In this document: one piece after another, positions 6,847-57,945 of the stretch
Layout: each line of letters opens with the position of its first letter
Position numbering within the stretch: the stretch's first letter is position 1
Source: Octopus sinensis
Lineage: Eukaryota
NCBI RefSeq assembly: GCF_006345805.1
Contig: NC_043016.1
Span: forward strand, 21,514,001-21,578,000
Direction: 5' to 3'
Length of the DNA: 64,000 nucleotides
The notes under the pieces: generated by a model
What the model was told of the DNA's origin: nothing
The model's input: the letters and a program-made list of their open reading frames with translations, nothing else
Database searches by the model: none
Translations under genes and position numbers: made by a program

Positions 6847-7452
6847 TATGGGACACTTTTCCCATTCAAACTACTCCAGCCTTTGGAATGTCTTTCTCAT
6901 TGTATGTGGCTGAGTATTATCCTGATGGAAGAACCTCAGTTGTCTTGAAACCAAAGATGGCCGTTTTTCTTCTGGCATTGTTGAATGACCAAATTGAAGC
7001 TTCTCTGCTAGTTCTTCAACAGTTACAATGGGATTTTGTTCCACCAGGGTTTGCAGGACATCTTCATTGAGCTCTAAAGATCTTCCAGGATGAGGCTCAT
7101 CTTCTAAGCTGTAGTTTTTGGCTTGGAATTTTTGGAACCATCGTTTACACTGGCTTGTGCTTATTGTCCGATCCTCATATACTACATTAATATTCCTCAC
7201 GTTTTCCATTGCTTATTAATTGAGCTCATTAAGCAAAATATGTTAGTTCCATTATTGTTAGTTCCATTATAGCTTTGAAAAAATAACTGTTAAAATTGAA
7301 CTGTGCTCTTCGAAACTTGCGCTAAGAATAAGGACAAGGTTAAATTATTACCTGCTTTTATAGCAAGTTGAAGCAGATAGTTTATCCTGTCCCCCTTTTT
7401 CTTTTAGTTCATGCATTTGAAAAAACTGCATTATTTATGGGATGACTCAGTA
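6847..7452 (-). mobile_element. Internally deleted mariner (Tc1/mariner) element
   Basis: ORF 6871-7209: N-terminal HTH (QCKRWFQKFQAKNYSLEDEPHPGRS) is joined directly to the catalytic-region HQDNTQPHT. Mariner-type terminus TACTGAGTCATCCCATAAATAATGC near 7452. Confidence 0.85.
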
Positions 7453-11440: not shown

Positions 11441-11950
11441 TCTACGTTGCAGCAATCCAACTGTAGAAGACAAGACCAAAACCAGCTACTATGAAGACAG
11501 CTACTAAGTGTTGATGGTGACCCTATTGAACGCTTTCAGTTGATACTCCATAAATAACAGGAACGATAATGATGATGACAGCAAGGGTGTATTGATTTGG
11601 AAGAATCAAATGACCATTAGTGTGAAAATCTTGATTAGAGTGTAGTTATGTAGTAGATGAAAGGAAAAGATACTGAAAATAAAACTCAAGGAGATGTAGA
11701 TGCAATGTTGATAAATATCAAGAAAATGACACAGATTAATAATAACTCAGATGATAAATTTGTGATAGAAGCATAATATTCATTCGACTGGAACCTGAGA
11801 AGGGGAATGGCAAAGTGTATACACATAGATGTAAACATATACATCAGTAACTCTTGATCCTAAAAATGGAATGAGAAGGAGGCAGCATTACACAAAATTC
11901 ATTCAAATGAGGGGACATGAAATAAAATTAAATCAAAACTAGTATTAAAT

Positions 11951-12236
11951 TAGAAATATTAATATTTCTAAACCTCTCTAAAGGAGACTACAGCAGCAGT
12001 ACTGGATATTATTAATTATGGTCAGCAGCAACGCCTGTTGGGTTCAGCTACTCCACATTGGTAAGGAGCAACTACCTTGAAACTACTCTGTGGATGCCAG
12101 ACCAGCAAGGGGAAACTGCTGACCTGCCCTGTTCGAAGGTTATATTGGACACAGCTAGAGGCAACGGCCTCTTGGAGCTAATCAATGGCAGCATTTGTCC
12201 TATTTTCCTGGACTGCCATGTTAGCTTGGCGATAAC
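11951..12236 (+). mobile_element. Old diverged monomer of the 362-bp hammerhead (retrozyme-like) repeat, with internal inversion
   Basis: 12021-12236 aligns by eye to the reverse complement of the array unit (GTTCGAAGGTTATAT, GAGCTAAT, TGGCGATAAC). 11951-12019 aligns to the unit end in the opposite orientation (TAGAAATATTAA...CTCTCTAAA.GAGA...CAGC.GCAG). Confidence 0.85.
12052..12094 (+). ncRNA. Decayed type I hammerhead (U3-A8 core) in the old monomer
   Basis: TCCACA-TTGGTAA-GGAGCAACTACCTT-GAAAC-TA-CTC-TGTGGA: perfect 6-bp helix I, but core changes A6G and G16.2C. Confidence 0.7.
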
Positions 12237-12432
12237 TTAATAATATTAAATTCTAGTGTGATTAAGTATTAAATGAACAAATAGCTAAATGGTTAGCTAG
12301 TTGGTAAATAAATTTGCTGAAACTGCTGTGTCAAAATGGTAGAGATTAAAAATAACCACTGTCTATGTGCAACAGAGGATTGAGAAGATGTGCATGCTTG
12401 TGTGTGTATATAGGTTGGTAGTTGCATAAACA

Positions 12433-15692: not shown

Positions 15693-16300
15693 CATCATCA
15701 TCATCATATGTCCATTTTCCATGCTAGCATAGGTTGGATAGTTTGACTGATGTCTGAAAGGACAATAGTTGCACCAGGCTTGCCAACCACTCCAAGAGTG
15801 TAGTGGGTGCTTTTTATGTGCCACCATCACAGGAACCATTCAGGTGGGCTTGACATCGATCATGTTTGGACAGTGCTTTTTACGTGCCACCGGTATGGGA
15901 GCCAGTCAGGGGCCACTGGCATTGGCTACATTTAGATGGTGCTTTTTACATGCCACTGGCATGGGAGCCAGTCAAGCAGCCCTGACATCGATCACATTCA
16001 GATAGTGCTTTTTACATGTCACTGGCACAGGAGTCAGTCAGGGGGCACTGGCATCAACCACATTCAGATGATGCATTTTATGTGCCACCGGAATGGAAGC
16101 CACTCAGGGGTCACTGGCTACAGCTACAATTTTGGTTTTACTTGACTCAACAGGTCTTCTCAAGCATATCATATCGTCTGACGCATCAAGAGTACTTTTG
16201 AATGGTCTGGACATGCAACACTGGTATCGGCCATGGTTGCAATTTCACTTTAGTTGCCAGATCTTCTCAGTCACAGCATATCTCCAAAGGTCTCAGTCTC
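15693..16300 (-). mobile_element. RTE 3' UTR-derived retroposon with five tandem ~65-bp modules
   Basis: (CAT)n tail at 15693; GTGCTTTTTA(C/T)(G/A)TG(C/T)CAC recurs near 15806, 15870, 15938, 16003 and 16070. Confidence 0.85.
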
Positions 16301-26239: not shown

Positions 26240-26985
26240 TCTAAGTAGCTCAACTAATTAGGAAGAGTGTTAGTCTAGATGAGATGCAGTTTGGTTTTGT
26301 GCCAGGGAGAAACACCACTGATGCTATATTTCTGGTAAGCTGCAGGAGAAGTATCTAACCAAATATAAACCTCTGTACTTGGCTTTTGTTGGAGAAAACC
26401 TTTGACAGGATACCACCCCCTGCTTCCTTATCTAGTGGTCAGTTTGAAAGCTAGGGATAGATGAGTGGTTAGTGAGACTGATACAAGCCATGTACAAGAA
26501 TGCTGTCAGTAAGGTGAGGGTTGGCAATGAGTATAGCAATGAATTCATTTTAGAGGTAGGGGTTCAGCAAGGATCAGTTCTCAGCACCCTCTTGTTCATC
26601 ATAATCCCCCAGACTATAACTGAATTTAAGACTGGCTGCCCTTGGGAGTTCCTCTATGCTGATGATCTTGTTCTTATAGCTGAATCACTACCAGAACTAG
26701 AGAAGAAATTTCAGATGTGGAAGCAAAGCCTAGAATCAAAGTGGGGCCTTAGAGTTAATTTAGCAAAGTCTAATGTCTTAGTAAGTAGGAAAACACACAA
26801 ATCACAAATCCCTTTTGAGAGATGGTCCTGCTTGATATGTAGAAAAGGCATAGGCAGAGATTCCATTAGGTGTACTCAGTGCAAGCTATAGACACATAAG
26901 AGGTGGAGCAATATCAGAGGAAGGTTAACAGAAAAAGTAGTCTTTGTGTGTGGCAATAAACATTAGAAATGTATAGAAAATAGAC
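26240..26985 (+). mobile_element. Older RTE RT fragment (same family as 55456-57945)
   Basis: VGVQQGSVLSTLLFIII, CPWEFLYADDLVL and WSCLICRKGIGRDSIRCTQCKL. Confidence 0.9.
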
Positions 26986-40212: not shown

Positions 40213-40575
40213 ATCATTATCATCATCATCATTGTTTAATGTCCGCTTTCCATGCTAGCATGGGTTGGACGATTTGACAGGACTGGCGAACCAGATGGCT
40301 GCACTAGGCTTCTGTCTGATCTTGCAGAGTTTCTACAGCTGGATGCCCTTCCTAATGCCAACCACTCCAAGAGTGTAGTGGGTGCTTTTATGTGCCACTG
40401 GCATGAGGGCCATTCAGGCGGTACTGGCAACATTCACGCTCAAATGGTGTTTTTTACATGCCACCTGCACAGGAGCTTGTCCTGTGGCACTGGCAACGAC
40501 CTCACTCGAATGTTTTTTCACATGCCACCAGCACAAGTGCCAGTAAGGTGATGCTAGTAACAATCATGCTCGAAA
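40213..40575 (-). mobile_element. RTE-tail retroposon copy with three ~65-bp modules
   Basis: (CAT)n tail and GTCCGCTTTCCATGCTAGCATGGGTTGGAC; modules near 40380, 40445 and 40509. Confidence 0.85.
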
Positions 40576-41782
40576 TTTTGTCAAATCTTGACTAGGTTAT
40601 ATTTTGCTACACAATCTTTATGGAATGTACACCACTAATTACTCCAAATATGACATAGGTAATCTGTATCATCAACAGCCTTTTTGTCCAATGCAAGGGT
40701 CCTCTGTAACTCTCCTCCTCTGCCTAAATAGGTTTTCTCTAGTACTAATGGAAAGTTGTATAAGATATTAATACAACTATTGTTGTATAATAATCAAAAT
40801 TTGGGTGACTGAAATGTCTGAACATCCATCAATTGTGATTTTTCATGAAATATTATTCTATCCTGAATAGCATACAAAAGTTTTGTTCTTTACATTGACA
40901 ATTACTTTTAGAAATGTTTTCTTGTATATCATGAGATGATGACCAAAATTTTCAAAAGGATGGTACATTCAACAAAATAGTCAGAAATAAGCAGTTCGCT
41001 TCTGGCTGTTTGTTCAGCCTCCATTGACTTCTTTTCTGGGAGTAATTGAGAAATGTCAACATTTGATTCAACCACATCATAGCATCTCTTATGCTTGACA
41101 AAAATTTTATTTCATTAGCATGGATTTATTTGTATTTCTAAAAATCATGGAGATGTTTTTTTTATATTAGACCAATGAACACAGCTATATATACCTATAC
41201 CCCTGGAAAAAATACATATGACACTACTAGACATACCACATATCCCATATCACACACCCCATCCCTGCAGGGACACCACAGTAATAATACATACTTTCCC
41301 CACTTCAAGATAACTCTTGCCAACTTCAGATCATACCCAATCAAGTGACATAACTCCTAACCCAATCCCCTGGACCCTTTTCGTTTCACCACTTTTTTCA
41401 CAGCAGCTGCTGACTGATTGTTCTAATCCACCTCTGACAATAGAAAGCAGTTGCCATATTCCCTTCTATATGGGCTGTATGTGATGAGTGTAAAGTTATA
41501 TAATCGGATTGTAACCTAACACTCCATTGTATTCTTTGCGCAAAACCACTTGGTAAGATCAGCCATGATGGATACTTAATATTATAAAATTCAGATAATA
41601 TACCCACTTTACGACAGATATATGAGTGTATCTTCTCCCTGACTTACGGTCTCTTAGACGACTCCTACATACATACATATATATATATAGATATATATAT
41701 ATATATATATATATATATCTATATATAATTATGGTGAATTGAAGAAATGGAGCTGAACGCAGATTGAACAGAAATCGTTTTA

Positions 41783-41872
41783 TTTCATTCTACACGTGTT
41801 TCGAAAGGCACAAATTACCAAAATCCGATTGAATAATGGGACCATATTGTGTCTTTCTCTTCAGGAAGAAAA
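41783..41872 (-). ncRNA. Type I hammerhead ribozyme (left arm)
   Basis: Reverse complement of the motif at 42766-42855. Confidence 0.85.
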
Positions 41873-42765
41873 TAGGAACCGTTGGAAAAACAAAAACAGA
41901 ACAGAGGCGGAGCAAAAACAAATCGAACTATGCTCCTAAGAGCCCATGGCGAAACTGTTTATCAGTGTATGTTGAGAACCGGTGGCTGAAGAATTTAACG
42001 GGTCAGGCATCGGTCAATCATGTGGGTGAGGGTGTGTGGGTGTTCTTTGTGACCGAGAATAAAGTGCAACCTTTGTGTCTCCGAACTCTTCCATATTTTG
42101 TTTGCCAGAGGCCGGATGGCAAACGGGCTTTTACAGTCGGCTTTTCGATGCCCCCATTGGCGGCATTACACTTATCTGGCTTTTAAATAGCGTTTATAAA
42201 TAATACCGGCACCCATAGCCCTTGGTAACAAATCTGAAATAGCCTTTAAGATATCTACGATTAACCACTGCAAGGGGAATTACTCTGTTAGACAAACGGG
42301 GCTTGGTTTTTTCACAGCGGGGGGTTTCCTTGACAAGGCAGGCTTAGATGAACACACACACACATAAAACATAATATATTTTTTTTTCTGCCACCCAACG
42401 GTTCTCGCGGCAGTAGCCACTGACAGCCGAACGATCAAACGCACACACGTACACAAAAAATGTTTTCTACCCCTACGCCAACACACACATATATAGAACA
42501 GTATACACACACGTCTCTAAGTAGATTTTTTCTCGCCCCTTATAAAACATCCAATTCCTTAAATAGTCAGAACTTTATTCTCGGTCACAAAGAACACCCA
42601 CACCCCTCACCCACATGATTGACCGATGCCTGACCCGTTAAATTCTTCAGCCACCGGTTCTCAACATACACTGATAAACAGTTTCGCCATGGGCTCTTAG
42701 GAGCATAGTTCGATTTGTTTTTGCTCCGCCTCTGTTCTGTTTTTGTTTTTCCAACGGATTTCCTA

Positions 42766-42855
42766 TTTTCTTCCTGAAGAGAAAGACACAATATGGTCCC
42801 ATTATTCAATCGGATTTTGGTAATTTGTGCCTTTCGAAACACGTGTAGAATGAAA
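42766..42855 (+). ncRNA. Type I hammerhead ribozyme (right arm)
   Basis: TTTTCTTC-CTGAAGA-GAAAGACACAA...TTGTGCCTTTC-GAAAC-ACGT-GTA|GAATGAAA; palindromic ACACGTGT helix III; predicted cut after 42847. Confidence 0.85.
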
Positions 42856-43062
42856 TAAAACGATTTCTGTTCAATCTGCGTTCAGCTCCATTTCTTCAAT
42901 TCACCAAATATTTTAATTTCAATTATCCGCACCAACGCACGGTTGCAACACCATATGGTTGTACCTCCAACCGTGCTGTTTACTGCTGTGATTTTTGCTA
43001 CTAAGGTATCGGTTAACTTTTGATTAATCTACTACAAGATTATTCATCTTTCTATTTCACAT

Positions 43063-43554: not shown

Positions 43555-44040
43555 CTCTCTCTCTCTGTATAAATATCATCATTATTTTTCCTTCATCATC
43601 ATTATTTTAACATCCACCTTGCTTTGTCTGCATGGGTTAGACAGAATTCTTTGTGATAGATTTTTTCTATGACAAGATAGCTTTCCTTTTGCCAACGTTT
43701 ACCTGTTTCCAAGTAATATTCTCTATGGTCAGATGTGTTTTTCATGAAAATGAACAACACTGCTTGTATGACACTGACACTCATTTATAACTATCTTGTG
43801 ATGTCAAAATAAGGTGGCATTAACACACACACACGTCTGCACACGTAAAGAGACATACACAGCATATATATATATATATAATAATAGTTATCGCCATACT
43901 AATATGGCATTCTTATAAAAATAAGAAAAAAGCTGTCCGCTTATTAGCTCCATGAGGCCATCGCCTTAAGTTAGCTATTTGATACACAAACTGTATCCAT
44001 ATAACCTTCGAACAAGGGAGGTCAGTCGCTCCACACTACA

Positions 44041-45888
44041 GCTACAGACGCGTTTCGGGGTATTGCCCCTTTTCAATGCAGCGTAGCCAGCCAGTAGGTG
44101 TCGCTTCCGACAATCTCTGTTCGATGGTTTTATTTACCTAGTTTCGGTGGAATACATCCACTTGTTTTCAATAATAGAAATATTAAAATAACTAAGTCTC
44201 TCTAAAAGAGAACAGCGGCAGCGTTCCCGGAAAATAATAGTTATCGCCATACTAATATGGCATTCTTATAAAAATAAGAAAAAAGCTGTCCGCTTATTAG
44301 CTCCATGAGGCCATCGCCTTAAGTTAGCTATTTGATACACAAACTGTATCCATATAACCTTCGAACAAGGGAGGTCAGTCGCTCCACACTACTTGACCGG
44401 CAGCTACAGACGCGTTTCGGGGTATTGCCCCTTTTCAATGCAGCGTAGCCAGCCGTAGGTGTCGCTTCCGACAATCTCTGTTCGATGGTTTTATTTACCT
44501 AGTTTCGGTGGAATACATCCACTTGTTTTCAATAATAGAAATATTAAAATAACTAAGTCTCTCTAAAAGAGAACAGCGGCAGCATTCCGGAAAATAATAG
44601 TTATCGCCATACTAATATGGCATTCTTATAAAAATAAGAAAAAAGCTGTCCGCTTATTAGCTCCATGAGGCCATCGCCTTAAGTTAGCTATTTGATACAC
44701 AAACTGTATCCATATAACCTTCGAACAAGGGAGGTCAGTCGCTCCACACTACTTGACCGGCAGCTACAGACGCGTTTCGGGGTATTGCCCCTTTTCAATG
44801 CAGCGTAGCCAGCCAGTAGGTGTCGCTTCCGACAATCTCTGTTCGATGGTTTTATTTACCTAGTTTTGGTGGAATACATCCACTTGTTTTCAATAATAGA
44901 AATATTAAAACAACTAAGTCTCTCTAAAAGAGAACAGCGGCAGCGTTCCCGGAAAATAATAGTTATCGCCATACTAATATGGCATTCTTATAAAAATAAG
45001 AAAAAAGCTGTCCGCTTATTAGCTCCATGAGGCCATCGCCTTAAGTTAGCTATTTGATACACAAACTGTATCCATATAACCTTCGAACAAGGGAGGTCAG
45101 TCGCTCCACACTACTTGACCGGCAGCTACAGACGCGTTTCGGGGTATTGCCCCTTTTCAATGCAGCGTAGCCAGCCAGTAGGTGTCGCTTCCGACAATCT
45201 CTGTTCGATGGTTTTATTTACCTAGTTTCGGTGGAATACATCCACTTGTTTTCAATAATAGAAATATTAAAATAACTAAGTCTCTCTAAAAGAGAACAGC
45301 GGCAGCATTCCCGGAAAATAATAGTTATCGCCATACTAATATGGCATTCTTATAAAAATAAGAAAAAAGCTGTCCGCTTATTAGCTCCATGAGGCCATCG
45401 CCTTAAGTTAGCTATTTGATACAGCAACTGTATCCATATAACCTTCGAACAAGGGAGGTCAGTCGCTCCACACTACTTGACCGGCAGCTACAGACGCGTT
45501 TCGGGGTATTGCCCCTTTTCAATGCAGCGTAGCCAGCCAGTAGGTGTCGCTTCCGACAATCTCTGTTCGATGGTTTTATTTACCTAGTTTCGGTGGAATA
45601 CATCCACTTGTTTTCAATAATAGAATATTAAAACAACTAGTCTCTCTAAAAGAGAACAGCGGCAGCGTTCCCGGAAAATAATAGTTATCGCCATACTAAT
45701 ATGGCATTCTTATAAAAATAAGAAAAAAGCTGTCCGCTTATTAGCTCCATGAGGCCATCGCCTTAAGTTAGCTATTTGATACACAAACTGTATCCATATA
45801 ACCTTCGAACAAGGGAGGTCAGTCGCTCCACACTACTTGACCGGCAGCTACAGACGCGTTTCGGGGTATTGCCCCTTTTCAATGCAGC
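44041..45888 (-). ncRNA. Six type I hammerheads, one per unit (44041-44082, 44403-44444, 44763-44804, 45125-45166, 45487-45528, 45847-45888)
   Basis: Minus strand GCTGCA-TTGAAAA-GGGG-CAATA-CCCC-GAAAC-GC-GTC|TGTAGC in every unit. Confidence 0.88.
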
Positions 45889-46152
45889 GTAGCCAGCCAG
45901 TAGGTGTCGCTTCCGACAATCTCTGTTCGATGGTTTTATTTACCTAGTTTCGGTGGAATACATCCACTTGTTTTCAATAATAGAAATATTAAAATAACTA
46001 AGTCTCTCTAAAAGAGAACAGCGGCAGCGTTCCCGGAAAATAATAGTTATAATATTTCTATTATTGAAAACAAGTGGATGTATTCCACCGAAACTAGGTA
46101 AATAAAACCATCGAACAGAGATTGTCGGAAGCGACACCTACTGGCTGGCTAC

Positions 46153-46555
46153 GCTGCATTGAAAAGGGGCAATACCCCGAAACGCGTCTGTAGCTGCCGG
46201 TCAAGTAGTGTGGAGCGACTGACCTTCCTTGTTCGAAGGTTATATGGATACAGTTTGTGTATCAAATAGCTAACTTAAGGCGATGGCCTCATGGAGCTAA
46301 TAGCGGACAGCTTTTTTCTTATTTTTATAAGAATGCCATATTAGTATGGCGATAACTATTATTTTCCGGGAACGCTGCCGCTGTTCTCTTTTAGAGAGAC
46401 TTAGTTATTTTAATATTTCTATTATTGAAAACAAGTGGATGTATTCCACCGAAACTAGGTAAATAAAACCATCGAACAGAGATTGTCGGAAGCGACACCT
46501 ACTGGCTGGCTACGCTGCATTGAAAAGGGGCAATACCCCGAAACGCGTCTGTAGC
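46153..46555 (+). ncRNA. Two type I hammerheads in the inverted arm (46153-46194, 46514-46555)
   Basis: Same motif on the + strand; predicted cuts after 46188 and 46549, 361 nt apart. Confidence 0.88.
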
Positions 46556-46963
46556 TGCCGGTCAAGTAGTGTGGAGCGACTGACCTCCCTTGTTCGAAGG
46601 TTATATGGATACAGTTTGTGTATCAAATAGTTAACTTAAGGCGATGGCCTCATGGAGCTAATAAGCGGACAGCTTTTTTCTTATTTTTATAAGAATGCCA
46701 TATTAGTATGGCGATAACTATTATTTTCCGGAAACGCTGCCGCTGTTCTCTTTTAGAGAGACTTAGTTATTTTAATATTTCTATTATATATATATATATA
46801 TATGTATATATAATTTTCTTAGAAAAACATAAATCCAGAGAAGAAGCATCTTCGTATATATATATAAAGTTAATCCAAACAGGAAAGCACAAAAACACAC
46901 AACTCGAGGACGTGGAACAAATATAGTATTATTGGACACTCAGGAAAGAAGGAAAGAAGGAGG

Positions 46964-46998: not shown

Positions 46999-47085
46999 AT
47001 AGGAGAAGGAAAGATCCAGAGAAAGGAAGACAGAGGGGATGGTTTTTGTTAAGCAGCATTGATTTTTACAATTCTGTAAATAATA

Positions 47086-47443
47086 ATAATAGTATTTTAT
47101 AAGCTAAAAGCTTATAAGAGATCACAACACAATGACTAAAGAAAATAGTGTCATAGTGGGGCATATAAGCCCTTGATGGGAAAAACGTAGGTTTTTCTGT
47201 ACACGTGGGACTCGAACCCACATCTCTTTGTTTTTGCGACAAGTGTGCTAAGCCATTTACACCAACATACAACCATTGGCTAGCATACTTGTCACAAAAA
47301 CAAAGAGGTGTGGGTTTGAGTCCCATGTGTACAGAAAAACCTACTTTTTCTATCAAGGGCTTATATGCCCCATTATTAGACTATTTTGTTTAGTTATTGC
47401 ACAGTGATCGCTTATTAGCTTTAAGCTTATAAAATACTATTAT
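47086..47443. mobile_element. Palindromic element of two head-to-head tRNA-like arms
   Basis: 47086-47255 is the reverse complement of 47277-47443 (21-nt spacer); B-box-like GTGGGTTCGAGTCCCAC on the minus strand of the left arm and GTGGGTTTGAGTCCCAT on the plus strand of the right arm. Confidence 0.85.
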
Positions 47444-47749
47444 ATATATATATATATATATATAAATGTATGTGTATTTTTTCCATGTGTACAAATAACA
47501 CAGAAAAAAAAAAAAAATAGTTACCAGAGTAGCAAAAAATTCACATAAGTACCAAGGATGTTACAGCCTACTTATAAAGATAGAAATTCCAGGGTTTAGT
47601 GAAATGTTTTTGTATAACAGATAAATAAAGAAATGGAGTTAAACGCAGGTGTTATTCAAATCTTTGTACTTCCGAAATATCTTTCGAAGAAAATATTGGT
47701 ATAATAATAGAACATGTAAAAAACTAGAACTAGGAAAGTTTTCTGTTTT

Positions 47750-49247: not shown

Positions 49248-49856
49248 AATATATATATGTATATGTATGTATGTATCAGTGTTTGTATGTTTAGTGTATA
49301 CATATGTATGTATATGTTTTTTGTGTGTGTGTGTATAAGTAAATGTTTGTTTGTGTTTGTATGAGTGTTTATTTTTATGCTGTTAGATCTCTGTAAGTCA
49401 TATTTTATTATAAACGGATTTATATCTATTTAATTAAATTTATTTTACCATTAATTAATTTACTCTGGGTATACATGTTTTTCCCTCTAACTAAAATTAA
49501 TTTTTGATTCAAGGTTTCCTTTGATTTTACATAATGATTTTTAAATCGTAATTTTAGTTTTATGCATACCGCTGGTTCTTAAAAGGACTGTTAGTTGAAA
49601 GGACCAATGAAACGAAACCAATTTCAAATATCTATTTGTCAATGTAAATTGTATATTTATACAAACAACCTTAGTTTTTTTGTTCTATTCTCAACCAAAA
49701 CTCTCCAACAGATGGGAACGGGAAACTCTGAGTAACAGTTTTTTGTGATGCTTTTGCAGCTTTAATAATAAAAAGCATATTACTCTGCCTCTGGTATTCG
49801 AATACTATTTTTTTACCACATTGTTTCACATTTATGTGCTTACTCTGGTGTGTGTG

Positions 49857-49888
<32 letters not shown>

Positions 49889-49989
49889 TGTATGTATGTA
49901 TGTATGTATGTATGTATGTATGTACGTACGTATGTACGTATGTACGTATGCATGCATGCATGTGTATATATATTGTGTATATATATATA

Positions 49990-51170
49990 TATAGTTTTTG
50001 TATGTGGCAGATGCTCGGGAGCATTAACCTCCGAAAATCTGCAGAAAACAACTTCCGTCACTTTCCAGGGGGAAAAACTAGAAGTAGTTGATAGCTTCCG
50101 TTATCTAGGTGACCAAGTCAGTAGTGGGGGTGGGTGCACTGAAAGTGTAACTGCTAGAATAAGAATAGCCTGGGCAAAGTTTAGGGAGCTCTTACCTCTG
50201 CTGGTGACTAAAGGCCTCTCACTCAGAGTAAAAGGCAGACTGTATGATGCATGTGTACGAACAGCCATGCTACATGGCAGTGAAACATGGGCCGTGACTG
50301 CTGAGGACATGTGTAAGCTCGTGAGGAATGAAGCCAGTATGCTCCGATGGATGTGTAATGTCAGTGTACATACTCGACAGAGCGTTAGTACCTTGAGAGA
50401 AATGTTGTACCTAAGAAGCATCAGTTGTGGTGTGCAAGAGAGACGATTGCGCTGGTATGGTCATGTGGCGAGAATGGATGAAGATAGGTGTGTGAGAAAG
50501 TGCCAATCCCTAGCAGTTGAGGGAACCCGTGGAAGAGGTAGACCCAGGAAAACCTGGGACGAGGTGGTGAAGCACGACCTTCGAACTTTAGGCCTCACTG
50601 AGGAAATGACCAGCGACCGAGACCTTTGGAAATATGCTGTACGTGAGAAGACCAGGCAGGACAAGTGAGCCCAGCCCACTTATGAATGCCTTTCCTCCCT
50701 TGGACACAAAGACCTGTTGAGACAAGCGAAGTCGAGATAGAACCTCATCCGACAACAGGCACCCATGCCAACCCCCTTTGCTTGCGAAGACATGTTGGGG
50801 CAAGCGAAAGCGAAATCGAATTGAACCAGCCAGGATCCCTGGTCTGGTGGTACGTAAAAAGCACTATCCGACTCGTGGCCGATGCCAGCGCCGCCTCGAC
50901 TGGCTTCCGTGCCGGTGGCACATAAAATACACCAATCCGACCGTGGCCGTTGCCAGCCTCGCCTGTCACCTGTGCAGGTGGCACGTAAAAAACACCCACT
51001 ACACTCACGGAGTGGTTGGCGTTAGGAAGGGCATCCAGCTGTAGAAACATTGCCAGAAAAGACTGGAGCCTGGTGCAGCCTTCTGGCTTCCCAGATCCCT
51101 GGTCGAACCGTCCAACCCATGCTAGCATGGAGAATGGACGTTAAACGATGATGATGATGATGATGATGAT
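49990..51170 (+). mobile_element. Young 5'-truncated RTE LINE (RT C-terminus, 3' UTR, (GAT)n tail)
   Basis: Open frame FVCGRCSG...FRYLGDQVSSGGG...MLHGSETWAV...RRLRWYGHVARM...GRPRKTWDEVV to the stop at 50668; three stem-loop modules in the UTR; truncation point in a (TA)n tract. Confidence 0.95.
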
Positions 51171-53782: not shown

Positions 53783-53908
53783 GTATATATAATATATATG
53801 TATGTATATATATATATATATATATATAGTATATATATATATATGTATATATTATATGTATATATATATATATATGTATGTATATATATATATGTATATA
53901 TATATATG

Positions 53909-53942
<34 letters not shown>

Positions 53943-54493
53943 TGTATGTATGTATGTATGTATGTATGTATGTATGTATGTATGTATGTAGTAGTATGTA
54001 TATATATATATTGTGCAGGTGGCACGTAAAAAGCACCCACTACACTCACGGAGTGGTTGGCGTTAGGAAGGGCATCCAGCTGTAGAAACATTGCCAAATT
54101 AGACTGGAGCCTGGTGCAGCCTTCTAGCTTCCCAGAACCCCGGTCGAACCGTCCAACCCATGCTAGCATGGAGAACGGACGTTAAACGACGACGATGATG
54201 ATGATGATGATATATGTATGTATATATATATATGTATATATATATGTATGTATATATATATATGTATATATATATGTATGTATATATATATATGTATATA
54301 TATATGTATGTATAATATATATGTATATATATATGTATGTATATATATATATGTATATATATATTATATGTATGTATATAATATATGTATATATATGTAT
54401 GTATATATATATATGTATATATATAGTATGTATATATATATAGTATATATATATGTAATGTATGTATATATATTGTATATATATATATATTAT

Positions 54494-54583: not shown

Positions 54584-55370
54584 CTAGCAGTAATACTCGT
54601 CGTTGATAGGTAATTACTTTTACTGTATCTCAGGCTGAGAAGCTAGAAAGATGGGTGTATCATATAGAAGAATAGCTTTACAGAATCCAGGTGACTGTGA
54701 TGGCACTGAAAAGGCTACAGGTCAAGTAGAACATCCATATGTCTCTGTTCCTTTTGATGTTTGAATAGGTGGTATGCTAAAGGAGAACTGAAAGATTCAG
54801 TTTTGAATCTGAACCAGGATGTGACTACAACTACAGATTTGGTTACTCTTCCTGTATGTGTATATTATATAAGAGAAAAACATGCAATAATTGAAGTGGA
54901 AAATAGATGGTTCTTCAAGATGCAATCCAGCAACTTTTAGTGTTTGGCCCTGACTTTTATTAATGCTCATGGCAAAAGAAAGTGGGATAGGAAACTGTAA
55001 TGGCTTAAATTGCAAGGCGACATTAGATGGTATAACTGGTATGTGAGGAATGAAGATGGTGTCGCCTTTACCACAACCAGTGAGAATATTTGCCTCAATG
55101 CAGTTCCTCATAGGTTTATGACAAGTAGTGTTGTACCATTGCATAATTTTTGTTGAGACAAATTGGGCAATAGCATGATAGGAGATATAGAAAAAGCACA
55201 AAAGCTTCCCTTGAACCATTTACTTTCATTTTGATGGACAAACAAACTGTCAAAGACCCGAATGGACAGAATTTCTCTTTTATATATATAGATAAAATAT
55301 AAGATAAGAAGAAAAAGCATAATAGTTTCCCTTGAACCATTTACTTGCATTTTGGAGATAAACAAGTGAA
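54584..55370 (-). mobile_element. Helitron remnant (PIF1 helicase C-terminus and CTAG 3' end)
   Basis: KLCNGTTL, ILTGCGKGDTIFIPHIPVIP and LQFPIPLSFAMSINKSQGQTLKVAGLHLEEP; minus strand ends ...CTGCTAG at 54584. Confidence 0.85.
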
Positions 55371-55455: not shown

Positions 55456-57945
55456 ATCATCATTTAGCGTCCACTTTCCATGCTAACATGGGTTGGACGG
55501 TTCAACTGGGGTCTGGGAAGCCAGAAGGCTGCACCAGGCCCAGTCTGATCTGACAATGTTTCTATGGCTGGATGCCCTTCCTAACGCCAACCACTCCGTG
55601 AGCGTAGTGGGTGCTTTTTACGTGCCACCTGCTCAGGTGCCAGACGAGGCTGGCAAACAGCCACGGTCGGATGATGCTTTTTATGTGCCACCGGCACGGG
55701 GGTCAGGCGAGGCTGGCAATGGCCATGATCGGATGGTGCCATTTACGTGCCACCGGCACTGGTATCACAGCTACAATTTCCATTGATGTTGATTGATTTC
55801 GATTTTGATTCTGATTCTCATTTGCCTCAACAGGTCTACACAAGTAGAGTTTTGTGTCCCAAGAAGGAAAGGTATGCATAAGTGGACTGGCTACATCCAA
55901 GGTAGAGGCCATGGGTTATGGTCTCACTTGTCCTGCCGGGTATTCTCACGCACAGCATACTTCCATAGGTCTCGGTCTCTAGTCATTTCCTCGGTGAGAC
56001 CTAAAGTTCGAAGGTCGTGCTTCACTACCTCGTCCCAGGTTTTTTGGGTCTACCTATTCCACAGGTTCCCTCAACCACTAGGGTGTGGCACTTTTTCACA
56101 CAACTATCTTCAGCCATTCTCGTCACATGACCATACCAGCGCAAACGTCTCTCTTGCACACCACAACTGATGCTTCTTAGATCCAACTTTTCTCTCAAGG
56201 TACTTACACTCTGTCGAGTATGAACACTAACATTACACATCCATCGGAGCATACTGGCTTCATTTCTTGCAAGCTTACGCATATCCTCAGCAGTCACAGC
56301 CCATGTTTCACTGCCATGTAGCATGGCTGTTCGTACACATGCATCATACAGTCTGCCTTTTACTCTGAACGAGAGGCCTTTTGTCCCCAGTAGGGGTAAG
56401 AGCTCTCTGAACTTTGCCCAGGCTATTCTTACTCTAGCAGTTACACTTTCACCCCCCACCCCCGCTAGTGACTTGGTTACCTAGGTAACGGAAGCTATCA
56501 ACTATTTCTAGTTTTTCTCCCTGGAATGTGGAAGTTATCTCTGCACATTTTCAGTGTTTATTGCTCCTGAGCATCTGCCACATACAAAAACTATTTTCCT
56601 AATTAGCCTTCCTTTGACATTGCTGCACCTTTTATGTGTCCATAGCTTACACTTGGTGCATCTTATAGAGTTTCTACCTACGCCTTTTCTACAGATCGAG
56701 CAGGGCCATCTACCTGAAGGCGTTTGTGATTTGTCTACCTTCCTACTTATTAGGACTTTGGTTTTAGCTAGGTTGACTCTAAGGCCCTTCGATTCTAATC
56801 CTTGCTTCCACACCTGAAACTTCTCCTCTAGTTCTGATAGTGACTCAGCAATTAGAGCAAGGTCATCAGCATAGAGAAGCTCCCAGGGGCAACCTGTCTT
56901 GAATTCCTCCATTATTGCCTGGAGGACTATGATAAATAGGAGGGGGCTGAGGACTGAACCTTGGTGGACCCCAACCTCTACCCGGAATTCTTCACTGTAC
57001 TCGCCAACCTTACTTGCAGCATTCTTGTACATGGCTCGCACAGCTCTCACTAACCATTCATCTTTCCCTAGTTTCCTCATTGACCCCACCAGATAAGGGA
57101 TCGGGGGACCCTGTCGAAGGCTTTCTCCATGTCAACAAAAGCCAGGTACAGGGGCTTATCTTTGGCTAGGTATTTCTCCTGCAGCTGCCTTACCAGGAAT
57201 ATAGCATCAGTGGTACTTTTCCCTGGCACGAACCCAAACTGCATCTCATCTAAACTAACTCTCTCTCTAATTAGTTGGGCTATGACCCTCTCCGTAACCT
57301 TCATTACCTGATCCAACAGCTTGATACCTCTGTAATTATTTGTATCTAGGGCGTCACCTTTACCTTTGTAGCAGTTGACTATTATGCTGCTACACCAGTC
57401 ATTGGGAATGACTCCTTCGTGTATCACCAGGTTAACTATACGGGTGACTAGGCTATAGCCGACACTACCAGATATTTTGAGCATTTCTACAGTAATTCCT
57501 GATGGGCCTGGGGCTTTCCCTGTCTTCATGCTTCTAATTGCCTTAACTACCAAGGAAGTGTCAACTCGGATAGCTGGTCCCTCTGTTGGGTCGACATTCG
57601 GCAGACTCTCTTTATACCATTCATTTTCTTTATTCAGCAACCTTTCATAGAGGCGCAAGTGAACCATCAACCATGCGAACACATTTCTCTCCTACTACAC
57701 CACGATTCTCTCTCACACACTGTCTTGCAACATGAAATACCTCAAGTCTTTCATCCTCACGGCGCAAAACATTGGCAAATTTTTTCTTATCTGCCTCCCC
57801 TCTGGCTAAATACACCTGCTTCCTAGCTTCCCTTCTGGCAGTCTGATACACTTCCCTGCTACCACCGTTCTTCCAGTCCTTCCAAGCCTGTTTCTTTTCT
57901 CTAATAGCCCTGTCAACAATATTGTTCCACCACCACGTTATTTTG
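55456..57945 (-). mobile_element. 5'-truncated RTE LINE, RT domain with PHD-type finger, 3' UTR and tail
   Basis: Overlapping ORFs 57645-57851, 57077-57682, 56535-57089 and 56025-56459: APGPSGI, NYRGIKLL, QFGFVPGKSTTDAIF, FVDMEKAFDRV, QGSVLSPLLF, LYADDLAL; few frameshifts. Confidence 0.95.

What the first reader, a model, noticed from the sequence alone, without database searches (positions are those of the whole stretch)
43881..46787. Retrozyme-like satellite: eight tandem ~362-bp units, each with a type I hammerhead ribozyme carrying a compensatory U3-A8 core
Seen: six units in one orientation and about two in the other, about 98-99% identical, with no real ORF. Each reads (ribozyme strand) GCTGCA-TTGAAAA-GGGG/CAATA/CCCC-GAAAC-GC-GTC|TGTAGC. 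Helix I extends beyond a TAC/T internal loop (CTACT-GGCTGGC pairs with GCCGGTC-A-AGTAG). The unit also contains several small hairpins (GCCATA/TATGGC, TCTTAT/ATAAGA, GATACA/TGTATC, GTCG/CGAC). Established: the hammerhead core is C3-U-G-A-N-G8-A...GAA with a tertiary C3:G8 pair that tolerates U3:A8; minimal helix III palindromes (here ACGCGT) work as dimeric double hammerheads; metazoan non-LTR retrozymes are tandem repeats of a few hundred bp with type I hammerheads that yield circular RNAs and are thought to be mobilised by Penelope-like elements. Inference: this is a young cephalopod retrozyme family. A search for the literal CTGAnGA core would miss it. Whether the family is already described cannot be checked here. 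Unit 1 has lost 9 nt of distal helix I.
Basis: partly seen in the sequence, partly recalled or inferred. Interest (0 to 1): 0.95.

Follow-up and report, generated by a model that had tools for sequence, protein, structure and literature searches.

The report
Hammerhead-ribozyme retrozyme tandem array
A 2.9-kb block of eight near-identical 362-bp repeats, each carrying a self-cleaving hammerhead RNA motif with a rare but already documented compensatory core change, looks like an ordinary animal "retrozyme" (a small parasitic element that spreads through circular RNA); its layout also hints at how such elements are inserted.

Summary
Window 43880-46787 holds 6.0 tandem units of 360-362 bp, then 2.05 units in the opposite orientation. 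Units differ from their consensus by about 0.5% and have no ORF over 72 aa. Each carries the same type I hammerhead: a 6-bp helix I continued past a UAC/U internal loop, a 4-bp helix II, and a core UUGAAAA...GAAA with U3/A8 replacing C3/G8. Helix III is the palindrome ACGCGU, and cleavage is predicted after GUC. My descriptor finds only these eight motifs, against 0.03 per shuffled window. Two copies fold into a double hammerhead, and the monomer folds far better than shuffles (z -8.0). A diverged relic at 11926-12248 keeps U3 and A8, and keeps helix I through two compensatory changes. Both loci consist of two blocks joined 5'-to-5'. The array sits in an (AT)n microsatellite, with both outer ends at the unit's only two CTATTAT motifs, which resembles Penelope-like element insertions. 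The best reading is a metazoan non-LTR retrozyme whose ribozyme works as a dimer. Natural U3-A8 covariation was published in 2011 and 2014, so this is a new member of a known kind. Cleavage, circular RNA and the cephalopod origin could not be tested.

The parts
43880..46787 (.). Whole retrozyme-like array: 8.05 unit equivalents of a 360-362-bp repeat, 41% G+C, inserted in an (AT)n microsatellite
43880..46050 (-). Left block with the ribozyme strand on the - strand. It reads from unit position R165 through six full turns to R176, i.e. 6 units plus 12 nt. Its ribozyme-sense 3' end ...CTATTATT abuts the left (AT)n. (R numbers run along the unit from the predicted cleavage site.)
46051..46787 (+). 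Right block with the ribozyme strand on the + strand. It reads from about R221-224 through two turns to R238, i.e. 2 units plus about 15-18 nt. Its 3' end ...CTATTAT abuts the right (AT)n. The block start is ambiguous within 46047-46051.
46138..46208 (+). Hammerhead with extended helix I (71 nt); predicted cleavage between 46188 and 46189
46499..46569 (+). Hammerhead with extended helix I (71 nt); predicted cleavage between 46549 and 46550
45833..45903 (-). Hammerhead (71 nt); predicted cleavage between 45853 and 45852 on the - strand
45473..45543 (-). Hammerhead (71 nt); predicted cleavage between 45493 and 45492
45111..45181 (-). Hammerhead (71 nt); predicted cleavage between 45131 and 45130
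44749..44819 (-). Hammerhead (71 nt); predicted cleavage between 44769 and 44768
44389..44458 (-). Hammerhead (70 nt) with a 1-nt deletion in distal helix I (R316); predicted cleavage between 44409 and 44408
44041..44097 (-). Hammerhead of the leftmost unit. The core is intact, but the 3' strand of distal helix I has lost 9 nt (R8-16). Predicted cleavage between 44047 and 44046.
46039..46065 (.). Central 5'-to-5' inversion junction AATAATAG-TTAT|AATATTT-CTATTATT. The two copies of the CTATTATT motif face each other here as an 8-nt inverted repeat.
43862..43879 (.). Left flank, (AT)9 microsatellite: one half of the presumed target site
46788..46803 (.). Right flank, (AT)8 microsatellite: the other half of the presumed target site. 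Joining the two flanks gives a continuous (AT)n.
12018..12248 (+). Old diverged copy of the unit (R294..362 then R1..~176). It carries a decayed hammerhead at 12051-12094: CTCCACA-TTGGTAA-GGAG-CAACTA-CCTT-GAAAC-TAC-TC|TGTGGA.
11926..12024 (-). Inverted partner block of the old copy (about R159..~258), joined 5'-to-5' to the + block. Its left boundary is uncertain in A+T-rich sequence.

Best explanation
This is a non-autonomous, non-coding retroelement of the metazoan 'non-LTR retrozyme' kind.

Proposed life cycle, inferred from the published model: the tandem units are transcribed as multimers. Two neighbouring hammerheads pair their palindromic ACGCGU segments into a shared 6-bp helix III (a double hammerhead). 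[quoted passage not shown] A host RtcB-type ligase closes this RNA into a highly base-paired circle. A reverse transcriptase supplied in trans copies the circle or a multimer, and the tandem cDNA is integrated.

The core uses a U3-A8 pair in place of C3-G8.

Inference from the locus layout: integration was target-primed on both strands of a (TA)n site. Priming occurred at two UA-rich CUAUUAU sites 63 nt apart in the RNA, giving two blocks joined 5'-to-5'. This is the pattern known for Penelope-like elements, which are therefore the most likely mobilisers. After insertion the array also grew by at least one two-unit duplication.
For: Ribozyme anatomy, shown directly in the sequence. Helix I has six base pairs. 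The 5' box reads U3 U4 G5 A6 A7 A8 A9. G10.1-C11.1 opens a 4-bp helix II with the loop CAAUA. G12 A13 A14, A15.1-U16.1 and C17 are all present, and there is no other core deviation.

Specificity. The descriptor gives 8 hits in the window against 0.03 per shuffled window.

Dimer. Two copies cofold into the double hammerhead at -67.7 kcal/mol, against 2 x -30.8 for separate monomers. In a 462-nt tandem transcript the two ACGCGU segments pair with each other in the minimum-free-energy structure.

Compact RNA. The monomer folds at -131.7 kcal/mol (z -8.0) on the ribozyme strand and -108.2 (z -6.9) on the other strand.

Family traits described in PMC7229834: 362-bp tandem units, 41.7% G+C, no ORF, no LTR.

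A second copy. The relic at 11926-12248 (nhmmer E 1e-22) shares U3 and A8, and keeps the UAC/U internal loop. All six proximal helix I pairs are kept, two through changes on both sides and one through G-U to A-U.

Insertion signature. (AT)n lies on both flanks. Both blocks have their ribozyme-sense 3' ends outward, at the only two CTATTAT sites of the unit. The blocks are joined 5'-to-5', and the relic shows the same layout.

Literature on Penelope-like elements. They prefer (TA)n targets and form tandem plus inverted 5'-truncated arrangements (PMC8557442). A purified Penelope-like element protein cleaves and extends both target strands and starts reverse transcription at two adjacent internal sites (PMC11167929).

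Literature on the core. U3-A8 cores occur naturally, and covarying variants at these positions are active in vitro (PMC3088659; PMC4209133).
Against: There is no experimental or transcript evidence here for cleavage or circles.

No Rfam hammerhead model scores the motif, even at E<=10.

Helix III as a monomer is only A-U closing a CGCG tetraloop. By analogy with the axolotl HHR_Amex1 motif, which self-cleaved only 6% in one hour as a monomer (PMC7229834), monomer activity should be poor.

The units are too similar to show selection on the ribozyme; 2 of about 16 events fall in it.

Only one diverged homologue could be found. No relatives appeared in metagenome or viral contigs or in predicted proteins.

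The window contains no Penelope-like element; the only reverse transcriptases are LINE fragments.

In vitro, hammerhead mutants of a Penelope-like element still insert (PMC11167929), so ribozyme activity is not proven necessary for spread.

The coincidence of end sites is only moderately significant if a TAT or TTAT microhomology is all that is needed: (2/14)^2 to (2/6)^2.
Confidence: 0.65

Rival explanations
1. Inert satellite DNA descended from a retrozyme. The hammerhead is a fossil that no longer cleaves, because of U3/A8 and a one-base-pair helix III. The array arose and grew purely by DNA-level processes such as unequal crossing-over, replication slippage and a microhomology-mediated inversion.
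For: The array shows at least one DNA-level event. Units L1/L3 share G at R220 and units L2/L4 share T at R186, the signature of a two-unit duplication. No Rfam hammerhead hit was found. The units are too alike to show constraint on the ribozyme. The junction sequences are A+T-rich, and such microhomologies could also serve recombination.
Against: Apart from the compensatory pair, every invariant core position and all helices are intact in all eight copies. The U3/A8 state is shared with a copy about 25-30% diverged, so elements with this core kept producing new insertions over a long time. Natural U3-A8 hammerheads exist, and such covarying variants cleave in vitro (PMC3088659). A second locus 32 kb away means the sequence moved, rather than only expanding in place.
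Confidence: 0.2
2. Not an independent element but part of an autonomous Penelope-like element: amplified pseudo-LTR or untranslated-region pieces whose coding part lies elsewhere or was lost.
For: The layout is tandem plus inverted 5'-truncated, the target is (TA)n, and each block carries a small terminal redundancy reminiscent of the Penelope-like element 'tail' (PMC8557442; PMC11167929). A 2026 preprint argues that animal retrozymes derive from pseudo-LTRs (10.64898/2026.07.22.740005).
Against: No GIY-YIG motif and no Penelope-like-element-type reverse transcriptase occur anywhere in the 64-kb window. [quoted passage not shown] It is not the minimal form described for these elements (PMC4209133). 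Eight complete units follow each other with no coding insert.
Confidence: 0.1
3. Chance resemblance: an ordinary minisatellite that happens to contain a hammerhead-like string.
For: The eight copies are one founder sequence, so the motif arose only once. The core departs from the consensus, and no Rfam model matches.
Against: The descriptor gives 0.03 hits per shuffled 64-kb window, about 2e-4 per 362-bp unit. That figure does not count features outside the descriptor: G10.1-C11.1, the palindromic helix III, 12 further helix I pairs, and a fold z-score of -8. The diverged relic keeps helix I through compensatory changes.
Confidence: 0.03

Closest known systems
Metazoan non-LTR retrozymes (Cervera & de la Pena 2020, PMC7229834), especially the axolotl HHR_Amex1 / newt satellite 2 type
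   Same: [quoted passage not shown] As in HHR_Amex1, helix III is a single base pair capped by a palindromic tetraloop, so efficient cleavage is expected only from dimers.
   Different: The core pair is U3-A8 instead of C3-G8. The weak, amphibian-like helix III is unexpected if the host is an invertebrate, because most invertebrate retrozyme hammerheads were reported to cleave well as monomers. Expression as circular RNA is not shown here.
Minimal hammerheads of Penelope-like elements, including the U3-A8 variant of Schistosoma mansoni Cercyon elements (Cervera & de la Pena 2014, PMC4209133)
   Same: Both have the natural U3-A8 covariation in the core, a palindromic 15.2-16.2 / loop 3 region that implies action as a dimer, the conserved G10.1-C11.1 pair, and an association with tandem and inverted copies.
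   Different: [quoted passage not shown] They sit in pseudo-LTRs flanking an RT/GIY-YIG ORF. Here the motif is of the canonical type, has no extra nucleotide, and no such ORF is nearby.
Classical hammerhead satellites: Schistosoma Sm-alpha and Dolichopoda pDo500 (described in PMC6155905, PMC2837043)
   Same: Both are repetitive DNA whose transcripts carry a type I hammerhead with a 6-bp helix I followed by an internal loop and a 4-bp helix II. From my own recollection of the Schistosoma ribozyme (a lead, not tested here), its helix I internal loop also contains UAC and its loop 2 reads CAAAUA, close to the UAC and CAAUA seen here.
   Different: Those have the consensus CUGAUGA core and are recognised by Rfam Hammerhead_1; this one is not.
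Plant LTR retrozymes and viroid-like circular RNAs
   Same: Both involve a non-coding, self-cleaving, compactly folded RNA unit thought to circularise.
   Different: Plant retrozymes use type III hammerheads within LTRs and have PBS and PPT motifs and 4-bp target-site duplications. Avsunviroid-type RNAs carry ribozymes in both polarities. Here there is one type I ribozyme in one polarity only, and none of those motifs.

Membership tests
Hammerhead ribozyme (type I) | Three helices around a junction, with helix I open-ended | tested here: met
   Helix I (6 bp + 7 bp + 5 bp) and helix II (4 bp) form in the minimum-free-energy fold. Helix III forms as a 6-bp intermolecular ACGCGU duplex in the dimer.
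Hammerhead ribozyme (type I) | Literal 5' box C3-U4-G5-A6-N7-G8-A9 | tested here: not met
   The sequence is U3-U4-G5-A6-A7-A8-A9 in all eight copies. The descriptor restricted to C3/G8 finds nothing.
Hammerhead ribozyme (type I) | Watson-Crick pair between positions 3 and 8 | tested here: met
   U3 and A8 can pair. The same covariation is documented in natural hammerheads, and covarying variants at these positions are active in vitro (PMC3088659; PMC4209133). The relic also has U3 and A8.
Hammerhead ribozyme (type I) | 3' box G12-A13-A14, A15.1-U16.1 pair, non-G at position 17, G10.1-C11.1 | tested here: met
   GAAA-C-GC-G-U-C with C17, and GGGG/CCCC as helix II.
Hammerhead ribozyme (type I) | Match to a curated covariance model (Rfam hammerhead families) | tested here: not met
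   No hammerhead family was reported at gathering score on the window, at E<=10 on 3.1 kb, or at E<=10 on an 88-nt stretch.
Hammerhead ribozyme (type I) | Loop 1 / loop 2 tertiary contacts | not testable with these tools
   An internal loop UAC/U lies six pairs from the core, and the 5-nt loop 2 reads CAAUA, so both are placed as in canonical type I motifs. The contacts themselves need 3D or biochemical data.
Hammerhead ribozyme (type I) | Site-specific self-cleavage | not testable with these tools
   This needs in vitro transcription of monomer and dimer.
Metazoan non-LTR retrozyme | Tandem repeats of about 150-450 bp, from dimers to large multimers | tested here: met
   Period 362, 6.0 + 2.05 copies.
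Metazoan non-LTR retrozyme | One type I hammerhead per unit, in one polarity | tested here: met
   Eight motifs, one per unit. No ribozyme was found on the opposite strand by the descriptor or by Rfam.
Metazoan non-LTR retrozyme | Low G+C (below 45-50%); no ORF, LTR, PBS or PPT | tested here: met
   G+C is 41.7%. ORFs are at most 65-72 aa and unit ORFs have no homologues. The units follow each other directly, without LTRs. PBS and PPT motifs were not searched for explicitly.
Metazoan non-LTR retrozyme | Monomer RNA predicted to be stable and highly self-paired | tested here: met
   -131.7 kcal/mol, z -8.0, with 0 of 100 shuffles as stable.
Metazoan non-LTR retrozyme | Dispersed copies, i.e. 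evidence of mobility | tested here: inconclusive
   One further diverged copy lies 32 kb away in the window. No genome-wide survey is possible with the collections available.
Metazoan non-LTR retrozyme | Expression as linear and circular RNA of unit length | not testable with these tools
   No transcriptome data were available.
Metazoan non-LTR retrozyme | Co-occurrence with hammerhead-bearing Penelope-like elements in the genome | not testable with these tools
Penelope-like element (pseudo-LTR with minimal hammerhead) | RT plus GIY-YIG ORF flanked by the repeats | tested here: not met
   No GIY-YIG-like motif occurs in any frame of the window. The only YADD reverse transcriptases are LINE fragments with RVT_1 and PHD domains.
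Penelope-like element (pseudo-LTR with minimal hammerhead) | [quoted passage not shown] | tested here: not met
   A9 is followed directly by G10.1, and a canonical 6-bp helix I with internal loop is present (criteria from PMC4209133).
Penelope-like element (insertion signature only) | (TA)n target preference, tandem plus inverted 5'-truncated copies, short terminal extension | tested here: met
   (AT)n lies on both flanks, two blocks are joined 5'-to-5', and each block is n units plus 12-18 nt (criteria from PMC8557442 and PMC11167929). This bears on how the element was inserted, not on what it is.

The most novel reading that the evidence does not exclude
The two loci in this window may record the insertion mechanism of animal retrozymes directly. 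In this reading, reverse transcription of a circular or multimeric retrozyme RNA starts at two defined internal CUAUUAU sites 63 nt apart. It is primed from both strands of a cleaved (TA)n target, which leaves two rolling-circle cDNA blocks joined 5'-to-5', each an integer number of units plus a 12-18-nt 'tail'. That would be locus-level evidence that Penelope-like element machinery mobilises retrozymes.

In addition, a lineage of canonical type I hammerheads has a fixed U3-A8 core and is invisible to standard descriptors and to Rfam. Retrozyme diversity may therefore be under-counted.
Probability: 0.3. Interest if true: 0.6.

Novelty: new member of a known kind. Interest (0 to 1): 0.4.

Why it matters
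This locus adds a family that every consensus-based hammerhead search would miss, which suggests that surveys restricted to CUGANGA under-count animal retrozymes. It also offers a natural U3-A8 core in an otherwise canonical type I scaffold, convenient for testing how the 3-8 pair tunes cleavage and ligation. More usefully, who mobilises animal retrozymes, and how, is still argued from co-occurrence and sequence similarity. A young insertion with clean junctions, plus an old one with the same layout, gives predictions that a genome-wide survey or an in vitro Penelope-like element assay could test. The predictions are block ends at two specific motifs, (TA)n targets, and 5'-to-5' inverted blocks.

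Tried and rejected
Rfam at three settings found no hammerhead family. The only strong sub-threshold hits were MIR6217 (103 and 88 bits against a gathering score of 110), mir-H11 and sRNA162. All sit on the long hairpin created by the inversion junction at 45894-46147, so I rejected them as artefacts of the palindrome.

Searches for relatives elsewhere all failed:
- Exact or degenerate DNA patterns of the ribozyme in metagenome contigs (two scans) and viral contigs gave 0 hits.
- A six-frame peptide query of the unit against 5.8 billion predicted proteins gave 0 hits at E<=0.01.
- Exact look-ups of two unit ORFs gave 0.

Organism identification failed:
- Exact look-ups of two flanking ORFs gave nothing.
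- A LINE RT query gave 3,709 hits, but the best were only 57-78% identical and came from unnamed assemblies, a mislabelled MAG, Hydractinia and Mercenaria.
- The contig of hit P0002 (locus L001) is an unidentified ENA assembly with no similarity to the unit.

Penelope-like element nearby: Pfam on the larger ORFs, inspection of stop-to-stop ORFs in about 7-kb flanks, and a GIY-YIG / YxDD motif scan of all six frames found only LINE fragments and a mariner fragment.

Selection on the ribozyme within the array: there is too little variation to say anything.

Dimeric-circle template as the cause of the alternating variants: rejected, because the outer units L0 and L5 do not continue the alternation. 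A two-unit duplication fits better.

Fold-back assembly artefact for the inverted block: rejected. The junction is offset (R165 against R221), the arms are separated by 52 nt, and the right block has five private differences and its own unique flank.

Literature: no paper in the held library combines hammerhead ribozymes with octopus or other cephalopods in a way that describes this family.
Full report
WHAT IS THERE.

The stretch 43880-46787 is a tandem repeat. TRF gives period 362, 6.0 copies and 98% matches for 43880-46050. The repeat finder shows that 46047-46787 is the same sequence in reverse complement, at 99-100%. The string GAAACGCGTC occurs twice on the + strand and six times on the - strand, always about 361 bp apart. 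The full 42-nt motif GCTGCATTGAAAAGGGGCAATACCCCGAAACGCGTC|TGTAGC is identical in all eight places.

I number the unit along the ribozyme strand from the predicted cleavage site (R1-R362). Cut at that site, the monomers are 360-362 nt long.
- The left block carries the ribozyme on the - strand and runs from R165 through six turns to R176.
- The right block carries it on the + strand and runs from about R221 through two turns to R238.
- About 16 mutational events separate the units from their consensus. Another is a 1-nt loss in distal helix I of the next unit.
- ORFs are at most 65-72 aa, and a six-frame peptide query of the unit found no homologue.
- The unit has 41.7% G+C, against 35.9% for the window.

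IS THE HAMMERHEAD REAL?

Read on the ribozyme strand, the motif has every element of a type I hammerhead:
- Helix I, GCUGCA/UGUAGC, six pairs including one G-U.
- The 5' box U3-U4-G5-A6-A7-A8-A9.
- G10.1-C11.1 opening a four-pair helix II (GGGG/CCCC) with the loop CAAUA.
- G12-A13-A14, the A15.1-U16.1 pair, and C17 as the cleavage nucleotide.

Positions 3 and 8 are the only departure from the consensus, and together they can still form a Watson-Crick pair. Beyond a UAC/U internal loop, helix I continues for 7 + 5 further pairs and then merges into a branched, rod-like fold of the whole unit.

A descriptor I wrote accepts either C3/G8 or U3/A8, four pairs in helix II, at least one extra pair in helix III, and at least five of six pairs in helix I. 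It finds only these eight motifs in the 64-kb window, all with the U/A core. In dinucleotide-shuffled windows it finds a mean of 0.03, which is roughly 2e-4 per 362-bp unit. That figure does not count G10.1-C11.1, the palindrome, or the long helix I. The eight copies are one amplified founder, so the argument rests on the quality of a single motif, not on eight.

HELIX III AND THE DIMER.

Between GAAA and C17 lies ACGCGU. As a hairpin this can give only A-U closing a CGCG tetraloop. This is the weak helix III described for axolotl HHR_Amex1 and newt satellite 2, which cleave poorly as monomers and well as dimers (PMC7229834; PMC4209133).

RNAcofold of two 71-nt copies gives the double hammerhead as the minimum-free-energy structure, with a six-pair ACGCGU:ACGCGU helix III and helices I formed in trans. 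Its energy is -67.7 kcal/mol, against 2 x -30.8 for separate monomers. In a 462-nt tandem transcript the two ACGCGU segments, 362 nt apart, pair with each other in the minimum-free-energy structure.

THE RNA AS A WHOLE.

The 361-nt monomer folds at -131.7 kcal/mol on the ribozyme strand (z -8.0; 0 of 100 shuffles as stable). The opposite strand folds at -108.2 (z -6.9). The difference comes from G-U pairs and points to the ribozyme strand as the one whose RNA structure matters. The other strand has no ribozyme candidate, either by the descriptor or by Rfam.

DATABASE MODELS.

Rfam 15 reports no hammerhead family at gathering score on the window, at E<=10 on 3.1 kb, or at E<=10 on an 88-nt stretch holding one motif. 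That is a failed membership test for the curated models. The sub-threshold microRNA hits at 45894-46147 are the long hairpin made by the inversion junction and mean nothing.

A SECOND, OLD COPY.

BLASTN and nhmmer with the consensus found one more relative in the window. The + strand at 12018-12248 matches R294-362 followed by R1-~176 (E 1e-22). The - strand at about 12024-11926 matches R159-~258 (BLASTN E 7e-8 for R188-249; nhmmer E 1e-3). Identity is roughly 70-78%.

Its hammerhead, at 12051-12094, is dead. The changes are A6 to G, a helix II decayed by transitions (GGAG/CCUU), and loss of the helix III palindrome (ACUACU). Three things are still informative:
- It has U3 and A8, so this core state predates the split of the two copies and is a property of the family.
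- It keeps the UAC/U internal loop.
- All six proximal helix I pairs are kept. Two changed on both sides (U-A to C-G and G-C to U-A, written 5' strand first as) and one changed from G-U to A-U. In total, 25 of the array's 32 predicted pairs survive in the relic.

With only two distinct sequences the shuffle control is uninformative (153 of 500), so this is supportive rather than statistical evidence. The relic also shows that the sequence has been inserted at more than one place, and that the family is much older than the array.

HOW THE ARRAY GOT THERE (INFERENCE).

The array is bracketed by (AT)9 on the left and (AT)8 on the right. Joining the flanks gives an uninterrupted (AT)n.

The two blocks are joined 5'-to-5' in the middle, and their ribozyme-sense 3' ends point outward. 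Those ends read ...CTATTATT|(AT)n and ...CTATTAT|(AT)n. CTATTAT occurs only twice in the unit, at R169 and R232, whereas TAT occurs 14 times and TTAT six times. Each block is a whole number of units plus 12-18 nt, so its inner 5' end lies just upstream of the same motif. At the centre the two motif copies face each other (AATAATAG-11 nt-CTATTATT).

The old copy has the same layout. It has two blocks joined 5'-to-5', one 3' end at about R176, and the other somewhere in R236-258.

Published work on Penelope-like elements describes the following:
- A preference for (TA)n targets, and tandem arrangements with an adjacent inverted 5'-truncated copy (PMC8557442).
- A purified Penelope-like element protein that cleaves and extends both target strands. 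It starts reverse transcription at two adjacent internal sites, and the interval between them explains the 30-40-bp 'tail' (PMC11167929).

The simplest account is therefore reverse transcription of a circular or multimeric retrozyme RNA, primed from both strands of a cut (TA)n site at two UA-rich sites. The two cDNA blocks would then be joined.

This is suggestive, not proven. If only TAT or TTAT microhomology were required, the coincidence of ends has a chance of about 0.02-0.1. The window contains no Penelope-like element; its reverse transcriptases are LINE fragments with RVT_1 and PHD domains.

After insertion the array changed at the DNA level. Units L1/L3 share G at R220 and units L2/L4 share T at R186, while the neighbours L0 and L5 have neither. 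This points to a two-unit duplication.

COMPARISON WITH WHAT IS KNOWN.

All sequence-testable features of metazoan non-LTR retrozymes are met: a tandem unit of 150-450 bp, G+C below 50%, no coding capacity or LTR, one type I hammerhead in one polarity, and a stable self-paired monomer (PMC7229834). Circular RNA expression and co-occurrence with Penelope-like elements cannot be tested here.

The U3-A8 pair is not new in nature. Perreault et al. 2011 reported the covariation in several natural hammerheads and noted earlier proof of activity in vitro (PMC3088659). Cervera & de la Pena 2014 retrieved about 1,300 U3-A8 minimal hammerheads in Schistosoma mansoni (PMC4209133).

I did not find a description, in the held library, of a U3-A8 core in a canonical, loop-bearing type I hammerhead of a tandem retrozyme. 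I also found no retrozyme described from cephalopods. The library is incomplete, and Dfam and Repbase were not available.

The weak, amphibian-like helix III is somewhat unexpected if the host is an invertebrate, since most invertebrate retrozyme hammerheads were reported to cleave well as monomers.

ORGANISM.

I could not confirm 'cephalopod'. The window is A+T-rich, full of microsatellites, and carries LINE, mariner and SINE-like debris. The LINE RT's best relatives are 57-78% identical and come from unnamed ENA assemblies, a mislabelled MAG, a hydrozoan and a clam. A marine invertebrate is plausible, but nothing more specific can be said.

VERDICT.

The interpretation as a retrozyme with a dimer-dependent, U3-A8 type I hammerhead is the best-supported reading; I put about 0.65 on it being a functional member of that class. 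It is a new member of a known kind, not a new kind. The most interesting by-product is the insertion architecture, seen twice, which gives testable predictions about how such elements are mobilised.

Noticed in passing
window 11926-12248: A diverged relic (about 70-78% identical) of the same 362-bp unit. It has a dead hammerhead (A6G) that still has U3 and A8, and the same 5'-to-5' inverted two-block layout as the array.
   Followed up: yes
window 44389-45903 (units L1-L4 of the left block): Alternating shared variants: G at R220 in L1 and L3, and T at R186 in L2 and L4, absent from the neighbouring units. This indicates a two-unit (about 724-bp) duplication inside the array after insertion.
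   Followed up: partly
window 45894-46147: Rfam MIR6217 scores 103 and 88 bits (gathering score 110) on both strands across the inversion junction. This comes from the long perfect hairpin, not from a microRNA, and shows how inverted repeats can nearly pass a curated threshold.
   Followed up: yes
window 47057-47472: About 270 bp to the right of the array lies a palindromic element of about 415 bp, with arms 47057-47250 and 47281-47472 that are 80-91% complementary. It ends in (AT)n. Its centre is called a tRNA (Rfam 36.3 bits; ARAGORN tRNA-Leu CAA, 47196-47272, - strand). It may be a tRNA-derived SINE inserted as an inverted pair, or the tRNA call may be produced by the palindrome.
   Followed up: partly
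window 41732-42032 and 42604-42906: A 100% complementary inverted repeat of about 300 bp with a 571-bp spacer, about 1 kb to the left of the array. It could be a very recent inverted duplication, a foldback-type element, or an assembly artefact.
   Followed up: no
window 56025-57682 (-), 26472-26891 (+), 49850-50668 (+): Fragments of a LINE with RVT_1 and a PHD finger, broken by a frameshift at about 57080. The family has thousands of relatives (57-78% identity) in marine invertebrate and unnamed assemblies. One close relative is labelled as a Herbaspirillum MAG protein, probably host contamination of that MAG.
   Followed up: partly
window 15851-16118, 50846-50996, 55610-55759; also 40240-40548, 50748-51140, 53852-54169: A recurring SINE-like repeat that contains 63-66-bp tandem sub-repeats (GGTGCTTTTTACGTGCCACCGGCAC...). 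There are several copies on both strands.
   Followed up: no
window 6871-7209 (-) and 54797-55219 (-): A mariner/Mos1-type HTH_48 transposase fragment at the first site. At the second, an ORF with no Pfam match whose sequence looked PIF1/Helitron-helicase-like to me by eye.
   Followed up: no
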